This document shows positions 2,351 to 39,543 of a DNA stretch of 64,000 nucleotides, in pieces; the stretch's first letter is position 1, and every line of letters begins with the position of its first letter. The translations under genes and the position numbers were made by a program. Location: positions 158,564 to 222,563 of the IMG/VR virus record IMGVR_UViG_3300045999_008996; one strand, given 5' to 3'. A model generated the notes under the pieces. It was not told the DNA's origin. It saw only the letters and a program-made list of their open reading frames with translations, and searched no databases.

Positions 2351-3046
2351 CTACTTTTTTGCATCAAAAATACGACCCCAACCAGTCTTATCTCTTCCTT
2401 TTTCTAACCAACGATAAGTAAGGTCTGACTTTTTATAGACTGAACCTTTACCATTCGTAACTGGTCCAGTGTAACCATCGTTTAGAGAACCATAAGGATC
2501 GTTAACAACGTAGTCCTCACCTTTCTTTCCAATCACTACAACCATGTGCCCGCCAGTAGGATTAGATAAAGAGCCGCGGTGCAGGATACCAATAACGACA
2601 GGTCTCCCAGCAGATAACTCACGATCAAGATCAACAAACCCAAGATTGTAACTAAAGCGTGACTTAATTCCATAATTTTCCAGAACTTTTGTCTGGACGG
2701 TGTGATCAGTTGAATCACCAATCGCAAAAACTTTTTGGACATAGGCATCATCGCCTTTTGCTCCTTGAAGCGTACCTGGTTTGAAATACTCTAGGCACAT
2801 CGCACAAGCAGATGAGTTGCAAGTTCTTTGTGCATCTCTATAATTATCTGTTTGTGGATAAAAAGGAACAGGAAGAACTCCAGGAACAGTTGGTTTTGTT
2901 CTATAAATTCTAACCCAATTAGAAGTGTCTTCAAGCAAATCTGGGTTCTTACTTACAAGATCAACCTCAAATTGTTCTACAGCAGCAACATGCTTTGGAT
3001 TGTTCTCATCATAATGTTTAAAAAAGTTATGAAGATCTACTCTCAT
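2351..3046 (-). CDS. Endolysin N-terminal part with C39-like (papain-fold) peptidase domain
   Basis: VPFYPQ...TCNSSACAM, GGHMVVVIG, VNDPYG motifs; late-type AATAAATA upstream. Confidence 0.8.
   Translation of the reverse strand: MRVDLHNFFKHYDENNPKHVAAVEQFEVDLVSKNPDLLEDTSNWVRIYRTKPTVPGVLPVPFYPQTDNYRDAQRTCNSSACAMCLEYFKPGTLQGAKGDDAYVQKVFAIGDSTDHTVQTKVLENYGIKSRFSYNLGFVDLDRELSAGRPVVIGILHRGSLSNPTGGHMVVVIGKKGEDYVVNDPYGSLNDGYTGPVTNGKGSVYKKSDLTYRWLEKGRDKTGWGRIFDAKK
2354..2360 (-). other. Candidate -1 ribosomal frameshift heptamer A AAA AAG
   Basis: GCA AAA AAG TAG; the -1 frame reads KVEAPTNINNANEVPLVG into the lysozyme. Confidence 0.7.
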
Positions 3047-3076
3047 TGTCTCTATTAATTAGATATTTTATTTATT

Positions 3077-3102
3077 AAAAAAGCGTCCTTTCGGACGCTT
3101 TT
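3077..3102 (-). terminator. Intrinsic terminator after peroxiredoxin
   Basis: AAAAGCGTCC-GAAA-GGACGCTTTTTT. Confidence 0.8.
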
Positions 3103-3110
3103 GAGTATCT

Positions 3111-3638
3111 TCAAACAGTTGCAGTTTCTCGAACTGTAGATTTTACATAATCCAGAACATTCTCTGGAGTAGTTGCTTCGTAAGGGTCACTGTCTGCATT
3201 GTCTCGCTGACCTGCCTCAACGAATAGTTTTTCGATGATTCCGTTATCCACGACTGCAGCATAACGCCAAGAGCGGTCGCCGAAACCAAGGTTAGACTTA
3301 TTGACGAGCATACCCATAGAGCGTGTGAAGTAAGCATTTCCGTCTGGGATAAGTTTTACGTTCTTGATGTTCTGATCTTGTCCCCAAGCATTCATTACAA
3401 ACCCATCATTAACAGAGATGCAGTAAATAGCGTCGATGCCACTACCAATAAAGTCTTCGTATTTCTCTTCGAATCCAGGAAGCTGATAGGAACTGCAAGT
3501 AGGAGTGAAAGCACCAGGCAGACTAAACAAGACCACACGCTTTCCATCGAAAAGTTCTGCAGTTGTGCAATTTACAAACTCTCCATTCTCGCGGAATACA
3601 AATTCAACTTGAGGAACTTGGTATTGTTCTTTACGCAT
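3111..3638 (-). CDS. Peroxiredoxin (type II / Prx5 family)
   Basis: VVLFSLPGAFTPTCS, SVNDGFVMNAW, RSWRYA motifs; GGAGG SD before MRKEQ. Confidence 0.9.
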   Translation of the reverse strand: MRKEQYQVPQVEFVFRENGEFVNCTTAELFDGKRVVLFSLPGAFTPTCSSYQLPGFEEKYEDFIGSGIDAIYCISVNDGFVMNAWGQDQNIKNVKLIPDGNAYFTRSMGMLVNKSNLGFGDRSWRYAAVVDNGIIEKLFVEAGQRDNADSDPYEATTPENVLDYVKSTVRETATV

Positions 3639-3687
3639 TTTAACCTCCATAGTATTTTCTTTTTTCTTAAAAATATTAAACATTAAT

Positions 3688-3795
3688 TCACCAGATTCCT
3701 GGAATGATTTGTCCAGTAAGGGCATAAGAACCCATTGCGGCAACAATACCAATCATTGCTGCCCAACCATTAATACGTTCTGCGCGTTCGTTCAT
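3688..3795 (-). CDS. hli: High-light inducible protein (35 aa)
   Basis: MNERAERINGWAAMIGIVAAMGSYALTGQIIPGIW with AExxNGxxAMxG and TGQIIPG motifs; GGAG SD; absent from ORF track. Confidence 0.9.
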   Translation of the reverse strand: MNERAERINGWAAMIGIVAAMGSYALTGQIIPGIW

Positions 3796-18778: not shown

Positions 18779-19822
18779 TTATTTTTTCAATTGAGAGTTA
18801 ATCCAATTATATGTTTTTTCAATACCTTCTTCTAAAGTCATACTGTAGTCCCAACCAAGTTTTTCGCGAATTAGATCATTATTTGAATTGCGACCACGAA
18901 CACCAAGAGGACCGTCAATATGATTCTTTTCTACTACTTTATTAGCAACTCTAGCAGCAGTATCAACAAGTTGATTGATTGTAACCATTTCTTCTGATCC
19001 AATATTAACTGGACCCATGAAATCACTATTCATCATTCTGCGGGTTGCTTCAATGCATTCATCAATATACAGGAAAGAACGAGTCTGTAAACCGTCTCCC
19101 CACACATCAATGGTTCCACCTTCCTCTGGAAGGTAGGCAACTTTACGGCAGATTGCTGCAGGAGATTTTTCCCTTCCTCCTTCCCAGGTTCCTTCAGGTC
19201 CAAAGATATTATGATACCTAGCAACCCTGACAGGAATACCGTAGTTCCTATGATAAGCGAAGTAAAGACGCTCTGAGAAGAGTTTTTCCCAACCATATTC
19301 TGAGTCTGGGTTTGCTGGATATGCGGACTCTTCACGACAATCAGGATTGTCTGGATCTAATTGATTATGCTCTGGATACATGCAGGCAGATCCAGAGTAG
19401 AAAATCTTAGTTTTGTTTACTTCTTTGAAATCATTCAGTTGTCTTTGTGCTTCAAGAACATTCAAATTGATTGTTGCAGAGTTGTGCATGATATCAGCAT
19501 CGTTCTCACCAGTGAAAACGAATCCCGCACCACCCATATCAGCAGCAAACTGATAAATTTCGTCAAAGGTTTCAATGTACCTACTAGGAACAAAATTATA
19601 AAAATTTCTATAAGGACCTTTATATTGAAGAACTCTCTCTACAAAATTTAAGTCTCGCAGATCTCCAATAACAAATTCATGTGCTTCGCTTTCAGAATAT
19701 TCTGGTAGTTTAAGGTCTACACCACGTACCCAATAACCTTCAGATCGTAGTCTTTTTACCATGTGACTTCCAATGAAACCACCAGCACCAAGAACAAGTG
19801 CTGTTTTCTTATATTCACTCAT
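18779..19822 (-). CDS. NAD-dependent epimerase, GDP-mannose 3,5-epimerase-like (WcaG family)
   Basis: GAGGFIGSH, AADMGGAGF, YGWEK, GGREKSPAAICRK. Confidence 0.88.
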   Translation of the reverse strand: MSEYKKTALVLGAGGFIGSHMVKRLRSEGYWVRGVDLKLPEYSESEAHEFVIGDLRDLNFVERVLQYKGPYRNFYNFVPSRYIETFDEIYQFAADMGGAGFVFTGENDADIMHNSATINLNVLEAQRQLNDFKEVNKTKIFYSGSACMYPEHNQLDPDNPDCREESAYPANPDSEYGWEKLFSERLYFAYHRNYGIPVRVARYHNIFGPEGTWEGGREKSPAAICRKVAYLPEEGGTIDVWGDGLQTRSFLYIDECIEATRRMMNSDFMGPVNIGSEEMVTINQLVDTAARVANKVVEKNHIDGPLGVRGRNSNNDLIREKLGWDYSMTLEEGIEKTYNWINSQLKK

Positions 19823-19848
19823 AAACGAATAAATTACTCCTAGTATAT

Positions 19849-19884
19849 ATTATACAAAAAAAGGAGGTTGTTGTCAACCTCCTC
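19849..19884 (-). terminator. Intrinsic terminator overlapping a sigma70 promoter for the sugar island
   Basis: GGAGGTTG-ACAA-CAACCTCC-T7, containing TTGACA-17-TATAAT. Confidence 0.75.
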
Positions 19885-19892
19885 AAGTTATT

Positions 19893-19996
19893 CAGGCTCG
19901 CCACCAATTCTTTGACTGGAAATTGGAAACCAGGCGGGAGAGAGTCCCATCCGCACCAGCAAGAATTTTTATTGTGCCTTATCTTGCGGGCACCAG
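19893..19996 (-). ncRNA. wcaG-like structured RNA (two pseudoknots, UGGYG repeats)
   Basis: GTGCC/GGCAC with GCAAGA/TCTTGC; CTGG/CCAG with CCAATT/AATTGG; TGGTG and TGGCG; upstream of a WcaG-family gene. Confidence 0.7.
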
Positions 19997-20532
19997 GAAG
20001 ACCATTTTTTAGATTTGCTATAAATTCTATTAGCAACTTCCATTTTAGTCATATTATAGTGTTCCATAATAGATTGGATACCAACATACTCTTTACCATC
20101 AACTATAAAAATTTTTTTTGAGGGTTTAACAAAATTTAAAATTCTTTTATTTCTTTCTTCTTCAGAAAGAGAATCCCAATGCTTTTTTACAGAGTGTTTG
20201 ATATTATCTTTATGTTCTTCAGTAATGACTTGTAAAGGTCTAACTTTTTTTAGTTTTTTGCTAATTTTTAGTTTATGTTCTTCACTTAATGGAGTTCTTC
20301 CTTTACTTCCACCACTTTTTCTGTTTAAAAGATTATCTAATATTGATATTAGATATTTTTCGTGTTTTAATGCATCCTCTTCAGAAAGGTTTTTCTTCAA
20401 AAATAATATTTTATCTTTGGTGGGTCTTGGAACATTATGATTTTTATGAAATGCTCTACGACCAGTTCCCTTTCCTATGTAATATGGTGTTCCATTTTCA
20501 CGAAGATATGCATATGTGTAATAGGTCTTCAT
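19969..20532 (-). mobile_element. GIY-YIG homing endonuclease with NUMOD3-like repeats
   Basis: YTYAY...YYIGKG, SEEHKLKIS; AT-rich; own TATAAATA at 20557-20564. Confidence 0.85.
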
Positions 20533-20566
20533 ATAAATTTTACTATTACATAGTATTATTTATATG

Positions 20567-20862
20567 AATGGCTCCACCACTTAGTTTTGAGAAACTAAGA
20601 AAAGTTGGGTTAACTTTGATATCTCGGTAATACCAAAGAAAGCACATAAGAATAGTACATCCCAAAGTTTAAGTTTAATAGCAAAGGGAACTGTGAGTAA
20701 TCCTCCAACAACCTTTATCATCAAACCGTATTTAAATTCTCCCCATAACATAGTTTGATAACCAATTATGAGGAGAATGTTTCCAATCCACCGAAGTAAA
20801 TCAGATTTAGACATAAGGGGTTTTGCTCCCGACCAGTGCTTTTTAAGTCTCTCCGTGACTAT
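20567..20862 (-). ncRNA. Upstream half of the structured RNA array (overlaps a 77-aa ORF)
   Basis: TGGTC and TGGTG units, a cUUCGg hairpin, a 13-bp + 8-bp pseudoknot, CTTAGT/ACTAAG pairing. Confidence 0.45.
20581..20814 (-). CDS. Small multi-TM membrane protein
   Basis: Hydrophobic 77-aa ORF. Confidence 0.6.
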   Translation of the reverse strand: MSKSDLLRWIGNILLIIGYQTMLWGEFKYGLMIKVVGGLLTVPFAIKLKLWDVLFLCAFFGITEISKLTQLFLVSQN

Positions 20863-21111
20863 TTACTCACCATCGTCTCTCACATAACAAGGAACACGAT
20901 CTGGATCTAACCATTTCGCATACTCAATATCCTCCATTGCAGTAGAACATTGTAGCACATTATCAAAAAGATAAATGTCATTCCAGCGTTTTGTATACTC
21001 GTTTTGCTTTTGCATACGGTAATCGGGTTTGCCGTTAATCTCAAGGATACCAACTTCTACGAAACGGTATCCTTCACGTTCCAAAAGAACTTTAGGAAGT
21101 CGTGTCATCAC
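20863..21111 (-). CDS. Hypothetical cyanophage protein
   Basis: ORF track. Confidence 0.7.
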   Translation of the reverse strand: MMTRLPKVLLEREGYRFVEVGILEINGKPDYRMQKQNEYTKRWNDIYLFDNVLQCSTAMEDIEYAKWLDPDRVPCYVRDDGE

Positions 21112-21323
21112 GCCACTTCAACGGATTCAAGATCTGCAAGGACATACTCCATAAGCATTTCATAATCATCAAGAGGATCACCAGAGAATACTACACCTTC
21201 ATTCTCATAGAAACGACGAACCTTTTTGTAGAGTTTCGGATTCTTTACATCAAGGTAGAAGTCACCGTTTGCTGCACCGCGAAGGGTTTGAACGTCTTTC
21301 TTGAATTTTGCTGTGAGAGTCAT
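21108..21323 (-). CDS. Hypothetical cyanophage protein
   Basis: ORF track; sigma70 promoter upstream. Confidence 0.7.
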   Translation of the reverse strand: MTLTAKFKKDVQTLRGAANGDFYLDVKNPKLYKKVRRFYENEGVVFSGDPLDDYEMLMEYVLADLESVEVA

Positions 21324-21376
21324 TGTTTTGAATGTTGACCTTAGTATTATAAGGGTTTGACAGGTAATCTGTCAAG

Positions 21377-21449
21377 TGCTCCTTGCGTGGATCGAACACG
21401 CCTCAGGCGAATTATGAGTTCGCTGCATTCACCAGATTGCTAAAGGAGC
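21377..21449 (-). tRNA. tRNA-Met or Ile2 (CAT)
   Basis: Cloverleaf; GCGAA-CTCATAA-TTCGC. Confidence 0.85.
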
Positions 21450-21453
21450 AAGG

Positions 21454-21541
21454 TACGAGTGGGTGGATTCGAACCACCTCAAAGCCGCTAATCTGGCGGA
21501 AAGGCGTTATAAGTGCCCTCTGACTACCAAGTCTCACTCGC
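21454..21541 (-). tRNA. Atypical 88-nt tRNA, anticodon TAT (Ile), long variable arm, 4-nt D loop
   Basis: GCGAGTG/CACTCGT acceptor; GACT-TGGT-AGTC; loop CTTATAA; GGTGG-TTCGAAT-CCACC. Confidence 0.7.
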
Positions 21542-21579
21542 TTGAACCAGGTCTATTATAGAGGACCTGGAACTCTATG

Positions 21580-21810
21580 TCAAGAACCTTCTTCGTGGTC
21601 AGTGTGTATTCGTATCATATCATCATCCACTTTAGATTCTACTGCAAACTTTATAGTTTCGTTATATGGAACAATCACTGCGTTTCTTTCTCCATCAGTA
21701 ATAATAAATGATTCGCCGTTCTCTACTCTTTGTATTAGATTGTCAAAATCTACTTGAAACTCTTGAACTGTAAATTTTTGGAGATCTGAAAGTTCTGGAT
21801 ACATTTTCAT
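21580..21810 (-). CDS. Phd/YefM antitoxin-like protein
   Basis: FTVQEFQVDFDNLIQRVENGESFIITDGERNAVIVP matches the Phd N-terminal pattern. Confidence 0.6.
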   Translation of the reverse strand: MKMYPELSDLQKFTVQEFQVDFDNLIQRVENGESFIITDGERNAVIVPYNETIKFAVESKVDDDMIRIHTDHEEGS

Positions 21811-21826
21811 AAAGTGAAGTTTATGA

Positions 21827-21898
21827 TCGGGGTGAGAGGGATCGAACCTCTGTCTTCTTGCTCCCAAAGCAAGCCGTCTACCGCTGACTTACACCCCG
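21827..21898 (-). tRNA. tRNA-Pro (TGG)
   Basis: CTTGC-TTTGGGA-GCAAG. Confidence 0.9.
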
Positions 21899-22015
21899 TT
21901 ATTTGTTTCTGTGTATAAACATAATACCAGCAAATGGTACGATTGTCAACCCACATCCACAAAGAAAAAGAAAGAAGGGACTTGCTGCTAATGTTTCAAC
22001 AAGATGAAAAATCAT
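21899..22015 (-). CDS. 38-aa membrane peptide containing the tRNA-Pro promoter
   Basis: MIFHLVETLAASPFFLFLCGCGLTIVPFAGIMFIHRNK; internal TTGACA-17-TATTAT. Confidence 0.5.
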   Translation of the reverse strand: MIFHLVETLAASPFFLFLCGCGLTIVPFAGIMFIHRNK

Positions 22016-22239
22016 CTTCCCCTCCAGTTCTTGTATTCATAATACATGTATTGGTCGGTTTCGTCAAGCCCCTGTAAAGGAGCATGAACGTCCCAGTGTG
22101 ACCATTCAATACAGAACTGTTTAATATGTATATCATTAACAGCAGTCTTTACTCCATACATTCTAGAAAATGAAGACATTGCAAAATGATATTTTTGTCT
22201 AATGTGCGGTTCCATTTCCCTTATATTCTTTGGAGTCAT
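22012..22239 (-). CDS. Hypothetical protein
   Basis: ORF track; true start may be downstream (MEPH). Confidence 0.6.
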   Translation of the reverse strand: MTPKNIREMEPHIRQKYHFAMSSFSRMYGVKTAVNDIHIKQFCIEWSHWDVHAPLQGLDETDQYMYYEYKNWRGR

Positions 22240-22318
22240 AGTATCCTCCTCTTGTTCCGAAATAGAGTGTTGTTAAAACAAACGGAATAGAAATGAAAAT
22301 AAGTGCTTTACCTAACAT
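22199..22318 (-). CDS. ndhP: NDH-1 complex subunit NdhP homolog (39 aa)
   Basis: MLGKALIFISIPFVLTTLYFGTRGGYYDSKEYKGNGTAH: TM helix plus FGTRxGxYDxxxYxGNGxAH; absent from ORF track. Confidence 0.8.
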   Translation of the reverse strand: MLGKALIFISIPFVLTTLYFGTRGGYYDSKEYKGNGTAH

Positions 22319-23330
22319 GATGTCCCCCAAACATATAACGCATTCCGTTTAGGATTTTTGCTCCGAATGATCCGAGATTGCGTGAGTTAAATCTTTCAAA
22401 TAGTGCTGTAGTAATAACAGGAGCGGGAACCCCCAGGTCCACAGCGGCAGAAACAGTCCAACGACCCTCACCACTATCGGATACTCCTCCAGAGAACTGT
22501 TTAAGGCTACCATCCCGGCGTAACACATCAGCAGTAAGATCAAGTAACCAAGACCCAACCACGCTACCGCGACGCCATAACTCAGCAACCTCAGCAACAT
22601 CAATATCATAACAATAGGATTCGGGGTCTGCCATAGGGGCGACTTCTGCATCTCCTTCTCTAACATATTTGGCACCCACATTAGCGTTCTTCAGAATGTT
22701 GAAACCTTCTGCATATGCTTGCATTATTCCATACTCAATACCGTTGTGAACCATCTTCACAAAATGTCCTGCACCTGGACCACCACAATGCAACCAACCA
22801 AACTCAGCAGAAGTTACATCCGAGTCATACTGAGTCCTGGGGGCAGCGTTGATTCCTGGAGCGAGGGCATCAAAAATGCTTGCACAAGTGGCGACCGCAG
22901 TATTTCCGCCACCAACCATAAGACAGTATCCACGATCCAAACCATAAACACCGCCGCTAGTACCACAATCAATATATTGGATACCAAGTTTTGCAAGACG
23001 CTCTGCTCTCTTCCGACTGTCTTTAAAATTGCTATTGCCATGATCAATAATAATATCTCCCTCACCACAATATCGTAGTAACTCATTGATTGTTTCCTCT
23101 ACAGTTTCTGCTGGCACAACCATTTGAAATATTCCTGGATTGCCATTACCTTTTACTACTTGAACAAGGCTTTGTATAGTAGTCGTAACACCATTAACAT
23201 ATCCGTTTTCATATGCTTCTTGAGCCTTTTCATAGTTCCTTCGGTAACCCCAAACCTCAATACCCGCTTTCATCATGCGGCGAGACATTCCTTCACCCAT
23301 TCTTCCCAAACCAATTAATCCTACTTTCAT
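22308..23330 (-). CDS. gnd: 6-phosphogluconate dehydrogenase (short form)
   Basis: GLIGLGRMG, DCGTSGG, GHFVKMVHNGIEY, DSGEGRW, FGGH. Confidence 0.95.
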   Translation of the reverse strand: MKVGLIGLGRMGEGMSRRMMKAGIEVWGYRRNYEKAQEAYENGYVNGVTTTIQSLVQVVKGNGNPGIFQMVVPAETVEETINELLRYCGEGDIIIDHGNSNFKDSRKRAERLAKLGIQYIDCGTSGGVYGLDRGYCLMVGGGNTAVATCASIFDALAPGINAAPRTQYDSDVTSAEFGWLHCGGPGAGHFVKMVHNGIEYGIMQAYAEGFNILKNANVGAKYVREGDAEVAPMADPESYCYDIDVAEVAELWRRGSVVGSWLLDLTADVLRRDGSLKQFSGGVSDSGEGRWTVSAAVDLGVPAPVITTALFERFNSRNLGSFGAKILNGMRYMFGGHHVR

Positions 23331-23422
23331 AAAACCTCCGGATATGCGTGTGTAAGTCCCCAATGTATAAAAAGTCCAATAGACGAAAAAAGAAGAATTG
23401 TAGATATTATTGTTTTAATCAT
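23327..23422 (-). CDS. 31-aa membrane peptide
   Basis: MIKTIISTILLFSSIGLFIHWGLTHAYPEVL; ATGA overlap with gnd. Confidence 0.5.
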   Translation of the reverse strand: MIKTIISTILLFSSIGLFIHWGLTHAYPEVL

Positions 23423-23528
23423 CTTCTTCATCTTCGTAAGCAGATGGTTCTTCAAAGAGTTCTTCCATTTTTTGTTGAAGAACTCTTTTGTTTAGTTTTT
23501 GCAAATCTTCTTCTGTGATTGTTACCAT
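23415..23528 (-). CDS. 37-aa acidic peptide
   Basis: MVTITEEDLQKLNKRVLQQKMEELFEEPSAYEDEEDD. Confidence 0.5.
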   Translation of the reverse strand: MVTITEEDLQKLNKRVLQQKMEELFEEPSAYEDEEDD

Positions 23529-23731
23529 TAGTTTAAAGTAATTTTAAGAAATGGAAGTAACGGGGGAATAACTCCAACTAATCTCAAAAGTCCCTCAGCA
23601 AATAAAGCAAGAACCACCCAACCGACGCACATACTAATGATAGAAGCATTACGGTTGTGTCTTCGGATAGCAGCATCAATCATCTCCTGAACTTCAGAAC
23701 GTGTGATAAATTCTTCTTGTTCGTGCATCAT
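23528..23731 (-). CDS. Small membrane protein
   Basis: ORF track. Confidence 0.7.
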   Translation of the reverse strand: MMHEQEEFITRSEVQEMIDAAIRRHNRNASIISMCVGWVVLALFAEGLLRLVGVIPPLLPFLKITLN

Positions 23732-23877
23732 TTTTCATCGCCAAGAAATTTTGCAAGAGGGTCTCTTCGGGTTTTTACGATTTCAACTGCTCTTTTGTAG
23801 AACATATTATCCATGTTCCCAGAAGATTCAAAAGTTGCTTTGATCTTCACCCAATTATCGTAGGTGTGTTGATCCAT
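23728..23877 (-). CDS. 49-aa hypothetical protein
   Basis: MDQHTYDNWVKIKATFESSG...; manual translation. Confidence 0.55.
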   Translation of the reverse strand: MDQHTYDNWVKIKATFESSGNMDNMFYKRAVEIVKTRRDPLAKFLGDEK

Positions 23878-23992
23878 CGGTTCGTCCCCGTGATACTACT
23901 ATATACTAATCACAGGTATTTCGATGTCAACTTTTTGTGTTCATATCGTAACACTGTTGAAAAAATTATTAAATTTGTAACTATTCTTAAAA

Positions 23993-24078
23993 CGGAAGCG
24001 GTAGGATTTGAACCCACGAACGCTATTAACGTTGGTTGTTTTCAAGACAACTGCCATAAACCACTCGGCCACGCTTCC
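23993..24078 (-). tRNA. tRNA-Ser (TGA)
   Basis: Type II cloverleaf; GTTGT-CTTGAAA-ACAAC. Confidence 0.9.
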
Positions 24079-24088
24079 AGTAGAAGGT

Positions 24089-24340
24089 TCAACGAACCTC
24101 AAAATCCAATCGTTTTACTTTACGTTGGCGTCTTGCTTCTTGAAAAGCAAGATCTTGCGAAGAAAGAACATTTGATTTTTGTTCTTTCTGGATAGAGTTT
24201 AACATAACAATGCGAGATAAGTCAAGTGCTGATATCTTATCTCCACGAATTGTTGCCATATTAGGACAACCACAGGTCACCGTTTTTGAATGATGTCCTG
24301 TTATTTCCTTATTACAATCTTTGCATCTTATTGAAATCAT
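24089..24340 (-). CDS. Small Zn-finger protein
   Basis: CKDC...CGC. Confidence 0.7.
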   Translation of the reverse strand: MISIRCKDCNKEITGHHSKTVTCGCPNMATIRGDKISALDLSRIVMLNSIQKEQKSNVLSSQDLAFQEARRQRKVKRLDFEVR

Positions 24341-24355
24341 GATTCTTCATCCTAT

Positions 24356-24790
24356 TCATTGCAGGTGTGCTCTTAACTGCCAAACAAACTTACCATGAGA
24401 TTCCATTAAATCTTGAACTAAATTTGCTGTAGCATATGACTTTTGATTTTCAGATTCTTCCGAAATCTCTACCATTAAATCACAAAACTTGGTATTGTTA
24501 TCAAGAAGCTCTTGAAGCATTTCTTTTGCTCCAGTTGAACTTGCTGCCTCTTTGATTTGAGTTACCTCAAGCATTCTAGAAAGAGAACTGAGAGGTTTTA
24601 CATTCAAATAACGCATATGTTCCGAAAGACGATCAATCTCTTCAAACATAGTTTCATACTGACCGCCAAAGAGTTGATGAAGTTGAGTGAAGTCTTCACC
24701 TACAACATTCCAATGAAATGCCCAAGTTTTATGGAATAAAACAAAAAGCGATGACTGTGCATCACTCAAGAGTTTATAAAGTTTTTCCAT
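24356..24790 (-). CDS. dps: Dps (DNA-protecting mini-ferritin)
   Basis: FHWNVVGEDFTQLH.LF...IDRLSE; start MEKLY. Confidence 0.85.
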   Translation of the reverse strand: MEKLYKLLSDAQSSLFVLFHKTWAFHWNVVGEDFTQLHQLFGGQYETMFEEIDRLSEHMRYLNVKPLSSLSRMLEVTQIKEAASSTGAKEMLQELLDNNTKFCDLMVEISEESENQKSYATANLVQDLMESHGKFVWQLRAHLQ

Positions 24791-24818
24791 TATACTCTTT
24801 TTATTTTTATTTATCAAG

Positions 24819-24891
24819 TGGGCAAAGAGGGATTCGAACCCCCGACATCCTCCGTGTAAAGGAGACGCTACTACCGCTGAGCTATTTGCCC
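24819..24891 (-). tRNA. tRNA-Val (TAC)
   Basis: Cloverleaf, loop TTTACAC. Confidence 0.9.
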
Positions 24892-24966
24892 TGGCTCCAC
24901 AACCTGGATTCGAACCAGGGACCAAGTGATTAACAGTCACCGACTCTACCGCTGAGCTATTGTGGA
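24892..24966 (-). tRNA. tRNA-Asn (GTT), CCA encoded
   Basis: Loop CTGTTAA. Confidence 0.9.
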
Positions 24967-24970
24967 ATGA

Positions 24971-25041
24971 AGGAAGTTACTGGACTTACACCAGTTACGA
25001 GGGCATTGTCTGCTTGTCTTGATTCTTTGACTTAACTTCCT
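24971..25041 (-). ncRNA. Degenerate tRNA-like element (intact acceptor and T stems, no canonical anticodon arm)
   Basis: AGGAAGTT/AACTTCCT; ACTGG-TGTAAGT-CCAGT; GCA-GACAA-TGC. Confidence 0.55.
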
Positions 25042-25080
25042 TTGGCGTCTTTCTATGCTATCTGCATAACGACTACCAAG

Positions 25081-25152
25081 AGCGAAAGACGAGATTCGAA
25101 CTCGCAACAACCTGCTTGGAAGGCAGGGACTCTACCGTTGAGTTACTTTCGC
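25081..25152 (-). tRNA. tRNA-Gly (TCC)
   Basis: Loop CTTCCAA. Confidence 0.9.
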
Positions 25153-25191
25153 AATGAGACAATCATAAACTATTTTAGTTTGATTGTCAAG

Positions 25192-25273
25192 TGTCGATGA
25201 GAGGACTTGAACCTCCACAGATTAATCTACTGGAACCTAAACCCAGCGCGTCTACCAATTCCGCCACATCGAC
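25192..25273 (-). tRNA. tRNA-Leu (TAG)
   Basis: Type II; loop TTTAGGT. Confidence 0.9.
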
Positions 25274-25277
25274 TTGA

Positions 25278-25324
25278 TGGAGTAAGTATGATATACCTCA
25301 TAAGGATATAACAGTGACTTACCC
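25278..25324 (-). ncRNA. 47-nt armless tRNA-like hairpin with CUUAUGA loop
   Basis: GGGTAAGT/ACTTACTC outer stem, TATATC/GGTATA inner stem, ends ...CTCCA. Confidence 0.45.
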
Positions 25325-25367
25325 TCTATCATTTTATATATTAACAGACTCAAAAGAATCTGTCAAG

Positions 25368-25440
25368 CGTCCTTTGAGAGATTCGAACTCCCGCACATAG
25401 GTTCGTAGCCTACTGCTCTATTCCACTGAGCTAAAAGGAC
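25368..25440 (-). tRNA. tRNA-Arg (ACG)
   Basis: Loop CTACGAA. Confidence 0.9.
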
Positions 25441-25443
25441 AAG

Positions 25444-25515
25444 TTCTGAGGGTAGGATTCGAACCCACGAATGGCGGGACCAAAACCCGCTGCCTTACCG
25501 CTTGGCGACCTCAGA
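25444..25515 (-). tRNA. tRNA-Gln (TTG)
   Basis: Loop TTTTGGT. Confidence 0.9.
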
Positions 25516-25587
25516 AGCCCTCAATTGGATTTGAACCAACGACCTACTCATTACTAGTGAGTTGCTCTACCACTGAGCTATAAGGGC
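25516..25587 (-). tRNA. tRNA-Thr (AGT)
   Basis: ACTCA-CTAGTAA-TGAGT. Confidence 0.85.
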
Positions 25588-25589
25588 GG

Positions 25590-25660
25590 GGTGCCGTGAG
25601 GGAATCGAACCCTCATATAGAGAACCACAATCTCCTGTCTTACCATTAGACTAACGACAC
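25590..25660 (-). tRNA. tRNA-His (GTG); G-1 not encoded
   Basis: Loop TTGTGGT; C73; position -1 is T. Confidence 0.85.
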
Positions 25661-25661
25661 A

Positions 25662-25735
25662 AGGCAGTAGATAGATTTGAACTATCGACCATAGGCATAT
25701 GAGACCCGTGCTCTGCCAGACTGAGCTATACTGCC
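25662..25735 (-). tRNA. tRNA-Met or Ile2 (CAT)
   Basis: Loop CTCATAT. Confidence 0.8.
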
Positions 25736-25737
25736 AA

Positions 25738-25826
25738 CGGAAGTGGTTGGATTCGAACCAACGGATGCCTATAAAGACATCGGCGGATTAGCAATCCACT
25801 GCATTAGACCTCTCTGCCACACTTCC
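25738..25826 (-). tRNA. tRNA-Ser (GCT)
   Basis: Type II; loop TTGCTAA. Confidence 0.9.
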
Positions 25827-25828
25827 AA

Positions 25829-25902
25829 TAGGAATGGTGAGATTCGAACTCACGACCACACGATTATCAGTCGTGTACTCTAACCAACTGAGCTACATTC
25901 CT
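25829..25902 (-). tRNA. tRNA-Ile (GAT)
   Basis: Loop CTGATAA. Confidence 0.9.
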
Positions 25903-25903
25903 G

Positions 25904-25978
25904 TGGTATTCCTAACGGGATTCGAACCCGTGCTGCCACCTTGAAAGGGTGGTGACCTAACCGCTAGTCGATAGGAAC
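25904..25978 (-). tRNA. tRNA-Glu (TTC), CCA encoded
   Basis: Loop CTTTCAA. Confidence 0.9.
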
Positions 25979-25982
25979 TTAA

Positions 25983-26025
25983 TGCTGACGGCATTCTGGA
26001 TTATCAGCTCCAGCGCAAATCAGCA
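25983..26025 (-). ncRNA. 43-nt armless tRNA-like hairpin with GCUGAUAA loop
   Basis: TGCTGAT/GTCAGCA outer stem, CTGGA/TCCAG inner stem. Confidence 0.45.
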
Positions 26026-26026
26026 A

Positions 26027-26098
26027 CGACTCTAACGGGATTTGAACCCGTGATACTACCGTGACAGGGTAGCGTGATAACCGCTTCACTATAGAGTC
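26027..26098 (-). tRNA. tRNA-Asp (GTC)
   Basis: Loop CTGTCAC. Confidence 0.9.
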
Positions 26099-26102
26099 AA
26101 GG

Positions 26103-26184
26103 TGGGAGGAGCAGGATTCGAACCTGCGAAGGTAGAACCGTCTGATTTACAGTCAGATTCCTTTAGCCACTCGGAAATCCTCCC
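26103..26184 (-). tRNA. tRNA-Tyr (GTA)
   Basis: Loop CTGTAAA; variable arm. Confidence 0.9.
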
Positions 26185-26187
26185 AGA

Positions 26188-26260
26188 TGGGTATGGTCGG
26201 GTTCGAACCGACGACTTACAGGTTAAAAGCCCGCTACTCTACCAACTGAGTTACATACCC
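26188..26260 (-). tRNA. tRNA-Lys (TTT)
   Basis: Loop CTTTTAA. Confidence 0.9.
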
Positions 26261-26312
26261 TTAGAATTAAATTGTCAAGGTTCGGGGTGTGGTCTCTCTC
26301 GACCACTTGATT

Positions 26313-26366
26313 AGAATACCACCTTTTGGACTCTGGGGGGAGATTGGTGGACACTTAGGAAACTGG
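26313..26366 (-). promoter_or_regulatory. Phage promoter motif, copy 1 (upstream of the tRNA array)
   Basis: CCAGTT-N4-AAGTGTCCAC-N28-TATTCT. Confidence 0.55.
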
Positions 26367-26376
26367 TCCAAGCAAC

Positions 26377-26410
26377 AAAAAAGGGGAGGAAACTTTTGGT
26401 TTCTCTCCCC
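26377..26410 (-). terminator. Intrinsic terminator
   Basis: GGGGAG-AGAAAC...GTTTC-CTCCCC-TTTTTT. Confidence 0.75.
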
Positions 26411-26435
26411 TCTATTTGCTTTTATGGATTGCATA

Positions 26436-26552
26436 TTACATATGTCTTTCCATTTCAGCAAACAGGGGATTACCCTCAATATGCCAATCACGGCAATCGA
26501 GAGTACTAATCTGTTTGGTGGTGATTTGGAAAGACATTGTTTTCGACCTAAG
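26436..26552 (-). ncRNA. Late-promoter fold-back RNA containing a 33-codon ORF (26436-26537)
   Basis: TATAAATA 26559-26566; ATGTCTTTCCA/TGGAAAGACAT and CAAACAG/CTGTTTG stems; terminator downstream. Confidence 0.55.
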
Positions 26553-26589
26553 TGTTTTTATTTATAAGACTTTTATTTAAAAAGTCTAA

Positions 26590-26663
26590 CGGGTTAGGAG
26601 GGACTCGAACCCCCGACCAATTCATTAGAAGTGAATTGCTCTATCCATCTGAGCTACTAACCC
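26590..26663 (-). tRNA. tRNA-Arg (TCT)
   Basis: Loop CTTCTAA. Confidence 0.9.
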
Positions 26664-26665
26664 AA

Positions 26666-26747
26666 GAGACCTCTCTGTTTGTGCTTCTATGAGAGGCATG
26701 AGAGGGGTGAGACTTATATGAGGTTTGGACCCTCACTGCTCATATGA
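26666..26747 (-). ncRNA. Pseudoknotted leader RNA 5' of tRNA-Arg
   Basis: ATATGAG/CTCATAT with GTGAG/CTCAC; CCTCTC/GAGAGG; TTGACA-17-TACAAT at 26750-26778. Confidence 0.45.
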
Positions 26748-39379: not shown

Positions 39380-39409
39380 CTATACATATACTGTTTTATG
39401 TATTTATAA

Positions 39410-39481
39410 TGGAGTGTAAGGAAATCGAATCCTTATTGCTGGAATGCAAATCCAGAGTAATAACCGTTATACGAACACCCC
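39410..39481 (-). tRNA. tRNA-Ala (TGC)
   Basis: G3:U70; loop TTTGCAT. Confidence 0.88.
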
Positions 39482-39543
39482 AAGTTTAGATATTATAAAA
39501 CCCCTCAACTAAAAAGTCAAGGGGTTAGAGCAACCTTCCGTGG

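What the first reader, a model, noticed from the sequence alone, without database searches (positions are those of the whole stretch)
19969..20577. Homing endonuclease cassette inserted in a hairpin loop of the RNA array with the closing helix intact
Seen: 5' of the cassette is GGAG-CCATT (around 20567-20575), followed within 2 nt by the TATAAATA late promoter and the GIY-YIG ORF. 3' is AATGG-T-CTTC (around 19997-20006). The two pair across ~560 nt. The ORF's last codons (SWCPQDKAQ) are supplied by the next pseudoknot. Known: endonuclease genes tolerate insertion in peripheral loops of group I introns. Inference: the fold is under selection and the endonuclease sits in, and may mobilise, a non-intron structured RNA.
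Basis: partly seen in the sequence, partly recalled or inferred. Interest (0 to 1): 0.68.

Follow-up and report, generated by a model that had tools for sequence, protein, structure and literature searches.

The report
Homing endonuclease gene beside wcaG RNA
A selfish, free-standing GIY-YIG homing endonuclease gene sits at a variable spot just upstream of a known riboswitch-like RNA (wcaG RNA) in a freshwater T4-like cyanophage and brings its own replacement for that RNA's first stem.

Summary
The sequence strings and coordinates are correct. The "structured RNA" is the Rfam wcaG RNA (RF01761, 19890-19995, minus strand, 83 bits), which lies upstream of a nucleotide-sugar epimerase gene. The 187-aa ORF (19969-20532) folds as a GIY-YIG nuclease joined to an I-TevI-like DNA-binding domain.

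Of 76 resolved related phage contigs, 65 are empty alleles, 9 carry small ORFs and 2 carry this gene. Other contigs carry an unrelated HNH endonuclease at the same spot.

In empty alleles a small hairpin (GGAGUCA/UGACCCC) does exist, and the cassette's left boundary falls in its loop. That part of the prediction holds. The hairpin's native 3' arm and the whole first stem (P1) of the wcaG RNA are replaced, so the right boundary lies 41-49 nt further on.

The proposed helix is -7.3 kcal/mol, no better than 6-28% of random windows, and has a pairing probability of 0.0014 or less.

No intron signature and no RNA-level excision were seen. Verdict: an ordinary seg-like mobile endonuclease. The one interesting detail is a shared 3' module that rebuilds P1.

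The parts
20581..20814 (-). Conserved 77-aa membrane-protein gene that forms the left flank of the variable spot
   Evidence: ORF. It matches phrog_2318 at E 4e-20. 329 relatives were found in IMG/VR.
20580..20599 (-). Hairpin (CUUAGUUU/AAACUAAG) over the stop codon of the 77-aa gene, followed by near-invariant GUGGUGGAG. It resembles the last stem and tail of a wcaG RNA.
   Evidence: 8 pairs, 99.7% paired in 39 distinct empty alleles, and 2 pairs show changes on both sides. In L017, Rfam wcaG aligns it to stem P3 plus tail at 22.1 bits, E 0.045, below the cut-off.
20567..20575 (-). GGAG(C)CA is the 5' half of the small hairpin of empty alleles, and homology to empty alleles ends at 20572-20569.
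   Evidence: A DNA joint at 20572 appears in runs X2 and X3.
19959..20571 (-). The 613-nt segment that replaces 41-49 nt of the empty allele. It holds the promoter motif, the endonuclease gene and a variant P1 stem.
   Evidence: Joint 19958/20572 skipping 613 nt in DNA runs X2 and X3. Allele lengths. The segment is 98-100% identical between genomes whose flanks are 70-95% identical.
20557..20564 (-). TATAAATA, a T4-type late-promoter-like motif 25 nt upstream of the ATG
   Evidence: All 7 copies in the window lie on the coding strand, although the total count is not above chance. The HNH alleles carry the same motif ahead of their ORF.
19969..20532 (-). Free-standing GIY-YIG homing endonuclease gene, 187 aa
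   Evidence: Model pLDDT 83.6. GIY-YIG domains Z 8.3 and 7.0 over residues 1-72, and I-TevI DNA-binding domain Z 6.7 over residues 139-184. Homologues carry NUMOD3, PF07460. Invariant residues include Y7, Y17, Y18, G20, R26 and E58. Pfam itself gives no hit.
19997..20006 (-). It consists of the Lys-Trp codons of the endonuclease plus the start of the tail shared with the HNH alleles.
   Evidence: Sequences in register. Duplex statistics.
19890..19995 (-). wcaG RNA (Rfam RF01761). Its P1 stem here is a variant (GCAAGA 19987-19982 with UUCUUGC 19965-19959) that contains the endonuclease's stop codon.
   Evidence: 83.1 bits against a cut-off of 42. Empty alleles score 104.9 bits with the usual P1. 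It is the only copy in the genome.
19861..19884 (-). Intrinsic-terminator-like hairpin plus T-run just after the wcaG RNA. It overlaps a perfect TTGACA-17-TATAAT promoter-like site (19877-19849).
   Evidence: The arrangement is present in 47 of 52 distinct relatives.
18779..19822 (-). Nucleotide-sugar epimerase gene (wcaG-like) that forms the right flank
   Evidence: Pfam Epimerase at E 4e-36 and GDP_Man_Dehyd at E 6e-27.

Best explanation
This is a free-standing, seg-like GIY-YIG homing endonuclease gene with its own late-type promoter motif. It occupies a polymorphic intergenic spot between a conserved 77-aa membrane-protein gene and the wcaG RNA and epimerase gene of a freshwater T4-like cyanophage.

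The cassette replaces 41-49 nt of the empty allele. The replaced piece runs from the loop of a small conserved hairpin through the first stem (P1) of the wcaG RNA. The cassette's 3' end supplies a different, still pairing, P1, and the endonuclease's last nine codons and stop codon lie inside it.

Inferred mechanism: during co-infection the enzyme cuts endonuclease-free genomes near this spot. Repair from the endonuclease-bearing genome then copies the gene and its flanking variant P1 (intronless homing with co-conversion). The altered sequence protects the carrier from its own enzyme while the RNA still folds.

The long-range pairing of GGAGCCAUU with AAUGG-U-CUUC is a coincidence of junction sequences and is not a selected helix.
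For: Shown:
- Fold and architecture of the protein and NUMOD3 in its homologues.
- A homologue sits between the DNA polymerase and uvsX genes in phage S-B68, a typical free-standing context.
- Of 76 resolved relatives, 65 are empty, 9 carry small ORFs and 2 carry this gene.
- Filled and empty forms co-occur in the same DNA runs, with the joint at 19958/20572.
- The cassette is 98-100% identical between genomes whose flanks are 70-95% identical.
- The variant P1 occurs in 10 contigs and the window. All but one carry the GIY-YIG or an HNH (PF01844, 28.6 bits) endonuclease gene ending in the same SWCPQDKAQ tail.
- The tail's protein sequence is not conserved: an early stop after WCP in L014 and L072, and Cys to Arg or Ser in L097 and L098. 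The stem still pairs.
- The wcaG model still scores 83 bits.
- The helix statistics do not exceed chance.

Inferred: endonuclease activity, the position of the cleavage site, and immunity through the variant P1.
Against: No cleavage or homing has been demonstrated.

Pfam GIY-YIG models do not hit the protein. The Foldseek E-values are weak (best 0.054), so the family assignment rests on the Z-scores, the motif and the domain order.

Presence/absence polymorphism and a highly conserved cassette could also arise from ordinary recombination in a hyperplastic region.

However, GGAGCCA also occurs in endonuclease-free alleles L064, L068 and L070.
Confidence: 0.8

Rival explanations
1. The endonuclease gene sits in the loop of a hairpin of a larger non-intron structured RNA. 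The closing helix is kept by selection across about 560 nt so that the RNA still folds around the insert, as with endonuclease genes in peripheral loops of group I introns.
For: Empty alleles have a hairpin GGAGUCA/UGACCCC and the left boundary is in its loop. The filled allele can pair GGAGCCAUU with AAUGG-U-CUUC. The upstream hairpin plus GUGGUGGAG resembles a wcaG stem and tail, so the structured region is longer than the Rfam model.
Against: - The native 3' arm and P1 are deleted, so the right boundary is outside the hairpin.
- The 3' arm is not homologous to the hairpin. Its CTTC part is shared with HNH alleles that keep the full hairpin upstream.
- The helix energy is not exceptional, at 6-28% of random windows, and its pairing probability is <=0.0014.
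- The small hairpin itself shows no changes on both sides among the 39 aligned empty alleles.
- A transcript from the cassette's own promoter motif would lack the 5' arm.
- Four different inserts of 230-770 nt are tolerated between the hairpin and the wcaG RNA.
Confidence: 0.05
2. The gene arrived by ordinary illegitimate or homologous recombination in a hyperplastic intergenic island. It is now an inactive or domesticated passenger, and its distribution reflects phage-phage recombination without any homing activity.
For: The same spot holds unrelated small ORFs of 66-70 aa. One contig (L094) keeps the variant P1 with no intact endonuclease gene. No activity data exist.
Against: The ORF is intact in all seven filled contigs, and the Tyr, Tyr, Arg and Glu positions conserved in the family are kept. 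The cassette is much more conserved than its flanks. Two unrelated endonuclease families at one spot is the usual signature of a homing site.
Confidence: 0.12
3. The insert is a degenerate intron or other self-excising RNA element that splices out and restores a continuous RNA.
For: The only support is the analogy with endonuclease genes in group I introns.
Against: No Intron_gpI or group II match at Rfam gathering scores in the window, nor at E<=1 in 19000-24500. No joint skipping the cassette in the two RNA libraries, while DNA runs hold the empty form as DNA. An RNA-library contig runs unbroken from 19953 to 20815.
Confidence: 0.02

Closest known systems
Phage T4 Seg proteins, especially SegB (a free-standing GIY-YIG homing endonuclease in the tRNA gene cluster; PMC2330249)
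   Same: A GIY-YIG nuclease with an I-TevI-like DNA-binding end. It is free-standing between genes of a T4-like phage, next to structured-RNA genes, with its own promoter motif. It shows presence/absence polymorphism between related phages, and co-conversion of flanks is expected.
   Different: Sequence similarity to T4 Seg proteins was not tested here, and Pfam GIY-YIG does not hit the protein. Here the ORF's 3' end overlaps and re-supplies a stem of a riboswitch-like RNA. No activity has been shown.
I-TevI (the GIY-YIG endonuclease of the T4 td group I intron)
   Same: Two-domain layout: an N-terminal GIY-YIG domain, a linker, and a C-terminal helix-turn-helix domain (Z 6.7, rmsd 1.2 A over 43 residues to 1i3j).
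   Different: It is not inside an intron. It is shorter, at 187 aa.
wcaG RNA motif (Rfam RF01761; Weinberg et al. 2010, PMC2864571)
   Same: A full-length match at 83 bits upstream of an epimerase gene in a T4-like cyanophage, as described for the family.
   Different: P1 is a variant with swapped strands and a long loop holding a stop codon, and this variant is tied to endonuclease cassettes. The RNA is followed by a terminator with an embedded promoter-like site, so it may not lie in the epimerase's 5' UTR.
Unrelated homing endonuclease families at one target (for example LAGLIDADG and His-Cys box at a common rDNA site, PMC2602781; T4 mobE, a free-standing HNH, PMC2790892)
   Same: An HNH and a GIY-YIG gene occupy the same spot in related genomes.
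   Different: Here the two genes also share the same last nine codons and the downstream stem. This points to one replacing the other, or to both using one pre-existing variant flank.

Membership tests
GIY-YIG homing endonucleases | N-terminal GIY-YIG fold (three-stranded sheet with flanking helices) | tested here: met
   The model (pLDDT 83.6) matches GIY-YIG domains of PD-T4-3 (Z 8.3, rmsd 2.5 A, 70 residues) and UvrC (Z 7.0) over residues 1-72. The best Foldseek hit is UvrC GIY-YIG, probability 0.99 but E 0.054.
GIY-YIG homing endonucleases | Conserved Tyr...Tyr-x-Gly, Arg and Glu motif residues | tested here: met
   Y7, Y9, Y17, Y18, G20, R26 and E58 are invariant in 31 homologues. A profile match to the PYYIGKG..R motif of a solved GIY-YIG protein reaches only E 0.08.
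GIY-YIG homing endonucleases | Match to curated family profiles (Pfam PF01541 or similar) | tested here: not met
   No Pfam family at E<=0.01, and none of the weak hits at E<=5 is a GIY-YIG family. The PHROG hits are families of unknown function. Homologues carry only NUMOD3.
GIY-YIG homing endonucleases | Site-specific cleavage of the endonuclease-free allele and preferential inheritance | not testable with these tools
   Indirect evidence only: polymorphism within samples and a cassette more conserved than its flanks.
wcaG RNA (RF01761) | Score above the Rfam gathering cut-off over the full model | tested here: met
   83.1 bits against 42, model positions 1-98.
wcaG RNA (RF01761) | Stems P1, P2 and P3 supported by covariation in relatives | tested here: met
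   In 39 empty alleles, 5 of 6 P1 pairs, 1 of 5 P2 pairs and 5 of 6 P3 pairs show changes on both sides. 97.6% of cells are paired, against 36-54% when the partner is slid.
Endonuclease gene within a group I or group II intron | Intron ribozyme core detectable around the ORF | tested here: not met
   No intron family in Rfam scans.
Endonuclease gene within a group I or group II intron | RNA-level excision of the insert | tested here: inconclusive
   No joint in RNA libraries X15 and X16, but these are assembled contigs of metatranscriptomes and cannot exclude rare forms.
   The left boundary is in the loop. The right boundary is 41-49 nt downstream, at the end of P1.
   6-28% of random windows pair as well. 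Pairing probability is <=0.0014. There is no compensatory change among the filled alleles.

The most novel reading that the evidence does not exclude
Two unrelated homing endonuclease genes (GIY-YIG and HNH) travel with one shared 3' module. That module rebuilds stem P1 of the wcaG riboswitch-like RNA from a different sequence, with the strands swapped and possibly with an extra GUGCC/GGCAC helix forming a pseudoknot. The module would keep the RNA working while erasing the DNA target, making it a structure-preserving immunity adapter for selfish genes that home into a regulatory RNA gene.
Probability: 0.25. Interest if true: 0.55.

Novelty: new member of a known kind. Interest (0 to 1): 0.35.

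Why it matters
The finding shows that the 5' edge of the wcaG RNA gene is a homing hot spot in freshwater T4-like cyanophages. It also gives a natural series of alleles at that spot: empty, small-ORF, HNH and GIY-YIG.

That series is a ready-made test of which parts of the still uncharacterised wcaG RNA can be changed. P1 can be replaced wholesale, and an upstream hairpin module can be moved 230-770 nt away.

The conserved terminator with an embedded promoter-like site also raises the question of whether the wcaG RNA really acts as a 5'-UTR switch for the epimerase gene.

As a mobile-element story it is an expected variation on the T4 seg and mob genes.

Tried and rejected
- **Array of wcaG RNAs:** rejected. 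There is one copy in the 222.5-kb genome. Only a sub-threshold partial module lies upstream.
- **Group I or II intron:** no Rfam match.
- **Pfam, PDB sequence search and PHROGs for naming the ORF:** no useful hit. A profile against PDB gave only E 0.08 to a GIY-YIG protein. The fold comparison was needed.
- **The 77-aa gene in marine phage SynMITS9220M01:** its neighbour is not homologous, so the marine isolates were poor empty alleles. IMG/VR relatives were used instead.
- **Compensatory change GGAGUCA/UGA to GGAGCCA/UGG as evidence for the helix:** rejected. UGG is the endonuclease's Trp codon, and GGAGCCA also occurs in endonuclease-free alleles.
- **First attempts that failed on my own errors:** an anchor regular expression and one wrong coordinate set.
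- **RNA-level excision:** looked for in two metatranscriptome runs and none was seen. The data are contigs only.

Full report
**Where the window comes from**

The window is the last 64 kb of a 222.5-kb IMG/VR virus record with terminal repeats. It is a T4-like cyanophage. Its nearest named relatives are Synechococcus myoviruses of the Kyanoviridae. The public runs that hold this stretch are lake, river and other freshwater metagenomes. All features discussed here are on the minus strand.

**What is at the coordinates**

- GGAGCCATT lies at 20575-20567.
- TATAAATA follows two bases later, at 20564-20557.
- An ATG at 20532 opens a 187-codon frame that ends at 19969.
- AATGG-T-CTTC lies at 20006-19997.

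Upstream is a 77-aa membrane-protein gene (20814-20581, phrog_2318).

Downstream, Rfam finds one family: the wcaG RNA (RF01761) at 19995-19890, at 83.1 bits against a gathering score of 42 and over the full model. It is the only copy in the genome. This motif was described by Weinberg et al. 2010 as a riboswitch candidate of marine metagenomes and T4-like cyanophages, near exopolysaccharide genes (PMC2864571).

A terminator-like hairpin follows at 19884-19861. It overlaps a perfect TTGACA-17-TATAAT site. After that comes a nucleotide-sugar epimerase gene at 19822-18779 (Pfam Epimerase, E 4e-36).

The last nine codons of the ORF (SWCPQDKAQ) and its stop codon lie in the 5' strand and loop of the RNA's first stem, P1.

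**The protein**

Sequence libraries did not name the protein:
- Pfam gives nothing.
- PHROGs gives families of unknown function.
- Sequence search of PDB gives nothing.

Other evidence identifies it:
- Of its 1174 homologues, many carry the NUMOD3 motif of homing endonucleases.
- A profile of 31 homologues touches the PYYIGKG..R motif of a solved GIY-YIG protein, but only at E 0.08.
- An AlphaFold model built on that alignment has a mean pLDDT of 83.6.
- Residues 1-72 of the model match GIY-YIG nuclease domains: PD-T4-3 at Z 8.3 and UvrC at Z 7.0.
- Residues 139-184 match the DNA-binding domain of I-TevI at Z 6.7, rmsd 1.2 A over 43 residues. The Foldseek E-values are weak, 0.054 at best.
- The family-conserved residues Y7, Y17, Y18, G20, R26 and E58 are intact.
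- A 42%-identical homologue sits between the DNA polymerase and uvsX genes of phage S-B68, a classic free-standing context.

I accept the reading as a GIY-YIG homing endonuclease, with the caveat that curated profiles do not hit it.

**Empty alleles**

Searching IMG/VR with the 77-aa protein gave 329 relatives, and 80 loci were fetched. Of these, 76 could be resolved between the conserved GTGGTGGA and the conserved wcaG core TGGTGCGGATGG:

| Allele type | Loci | Anchor-to-core distance (nt) |
|---|---|---|
| Empty | 65 | 51-59 |
| Small ORF of 66-70 aa | 9 | 285-301 |
| This endonuclease gene (L014, L072) | 2 | 623, same as the window |

Pattern and protein searches added more contigs:
- Further filled contigs with a 89-90%-identical enzyme (L097, and L098 and its duplicates).
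- Four contigs (L086-L089) with an unrelated 144-aa HNH endonuclease at the same spot (Pfam HNH, 28.6 bits). Two of these also carry the small ORF.
- One contig (L094) with a decayed small ORF and no intact endonuclease gene.

**Boundaries**

In empty alleles the sequence reads, in order:
1. A hairpin CUUAGUUU/AAACUAAG over the stop codon of the 77-aa gene.
2. GUGGUG.
3. A small hairpin GGAGUCA, a loop of 3-5 nt, then UGACCCC.
4. UAUGAGUUU.
5. P1 of the wcaG RNA (CUUGCU...AGCAAG).
6. UGGUGCGGAUGGG.

The filled allele is homologous up to GGAG(C)CA and again from TGGTGCGG. DNA contigs in runs X2 and X3 place the joint at 20572/19958, skipping 613 nt. Filled and empty forms co-occur in those same runs.

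The hairpin's own 3' arm, the spacer and the whole usual P1 (41-49 nt in all) are absent from the filled allele.

Placing all alleles in register at the wcaG core shows a block shared by the GIY-YIG alleles, the HNH alleles and L094. It runs from CTTC(T/C)TGGTGCCC through the variant P1 (GCAAGA...UUCUUGC) to the core.
- The AATGG is the Lys-Trp pair of the GIY-YIG frame.
- In the HNH alleles the complete small hairpin is present upstream of the insert. The tail therefore cannot be that hairpin's 3' arm.

**Is the helix more than chance?**

- The duplex is worth -7.3 kcal/mol.
- Against every 40-nt window of the same strand, 6.4% pair with the 9-nt arm as well as the real 3' flank does. For a 26-nt 5' flank the figure is 27.5%.
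- In a partition-function fold of 20625-19850, the nine pairs have probabilities of 0.0003-0.0014. The 5' arm pairs inside the cassette instead.
- Among the distinct filled alleles, the only change in either arm is AATGG to AGTGG. It is synonymous and gives a G-U pair.
- GGAGCCA, with C in place of the usual U, also occurs in endonuclease-free alleles L064, L068 and L070.
- The small hairpin itself is conserved (92-96% of cells paired) but shows no change on both sides in 39 distinct empty alleles. The upstream hairpin and stems P1, P2 and P3 do show such changes.
- A transcript started at the cassette's own TATAAATA would not contain the 5' arm.

**Not an intron**

Rfam finds no group I or II intron at gathering scores in the window, nor at E<=1 in 19000-24500. 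In two metatranscriptome runs no contig joins across the cassette, and one contig runs unbroken from 19953 to 20815. These are assembled contigs and may include DNA, so this is weak negative evidence.

**How it most likely works**

Facts that fit intronless homing as known for the T4 seg and mob genes (PMC2330249, PMC2790892):
- The cassette is 98-100% identical between the window, L014 and L072, while their flanks are 70-95% identical.
- The spot is polymorphic within single samples.
- Two unrelated endonuclease families occupy it.

In that process the enzyme cuts endonuclease-free genomes near the spot. Repair then copies the gene plus its flanking markers.

The variant P1 is found almost only with an endonuclease gene: 10 of the 11 sequences that carry it, the window included.

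Its protein reading is not conserved. There is a stop after WCP in L014 and L072, and Cys becomes Arg or Ser in L097 and L098. The stem still pairs, and the wcaG model still scores 83 bits, against 105 bits in an empty allele.

I infer that this tail is kept for the RNA and, probably, as the sequence difference that protects carriers from cleavage. Activity, cut site and immunity are inferred and have not been shown.

The shared tail also suggests one of two histories. Either one endonuclease gene displaced the other, or both entered an L094-like variant flank.

**Verdict**

Its central claim, an intact closing helix under selection with the gene inside the RNA, is not supported.

It is a new member of a known kind. 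The shared P1-rebuilding tail is the one feature worth a bench test.

Noticed in passing
window 19849-19884 (-); same place in L006-L094: The terminator-like hairpin right after the wcaG RNA carries a -35 box (TTGACA, TTGCAT or TTTACA) in its loop and 3' arm. A TATAAT follows 17 nt later, after the T-run. This holds in 47 of 52 distinct relatives and in marine phage SynMITS9220M01. The wcaG RNA may therefore lie upstream of the epimerase promoter and not in its 5' UTR.
   Followed up: partly
window 20572-20599 (-); L017 2671-2750: A covarying hairpin over the stop codon of the 77-aa gene, plus GUGGUGGAG, aligns to stem P3 and the tail of the wcaG model. The score is 22 bits, E 0.045, below the cut-off. 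It may be a relic or a functional half-copy of a second wcaG-like module.
   Followed up: partly
window 19973-19993 (-); L097 2005-2094: In the variant P1, GUGCC can pair with GGCAC around the GCAAGA strand, which would make an H-type pseudoknot with GCAAGA/UCUUGC. L097 has GCGCC/GGCGC, a change on both sides. L098 has GUCCC, which breaks one pair.
   Followed up: partly
L009, L047, L059 (about 2860-3720); L012, L030, L039, L046: In some relatives other genes lie between the wcaG RNA and the epimerase gene. L009 has a 247-aa ORF there. L030 has a GDP-mannose-dehydratase-like gene and an aminotransferase-like gene. The RNA is therefore not tied to one downstream gene.
   Followed up: partly
window 26669-26705 (-): Rfam abiF RNA match (41.3 bits, cut-off 37) directly upstream of the tRNA-Arg gene at the head of the tRNA array.
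   Followed up: no
window 21376-26664 and 39409-39482 (-): Twenty tRNA genes, most of them in one tight array. There is also a weak tRNA-Sec-like match at 21455-21541 (27 bits, below the cut-off).
   Followed up: no
window, whole: All seven TATAAATA motifs lie on the minus (coding) strand, although their total number is no higher than in shuffles (7 against a mean of 5.4).
   Followed up: partly
L004 (Prochlorococcus phage P-TIM68) 1674-2075: An annotated HNH endonuclease gene lies two genes upstream of the epimerase gene in this marine phage. No wcaG RNA reaches the Rfam cut-off in that locus, but a manA RNA does, at its 5' end.
   Followed up: no
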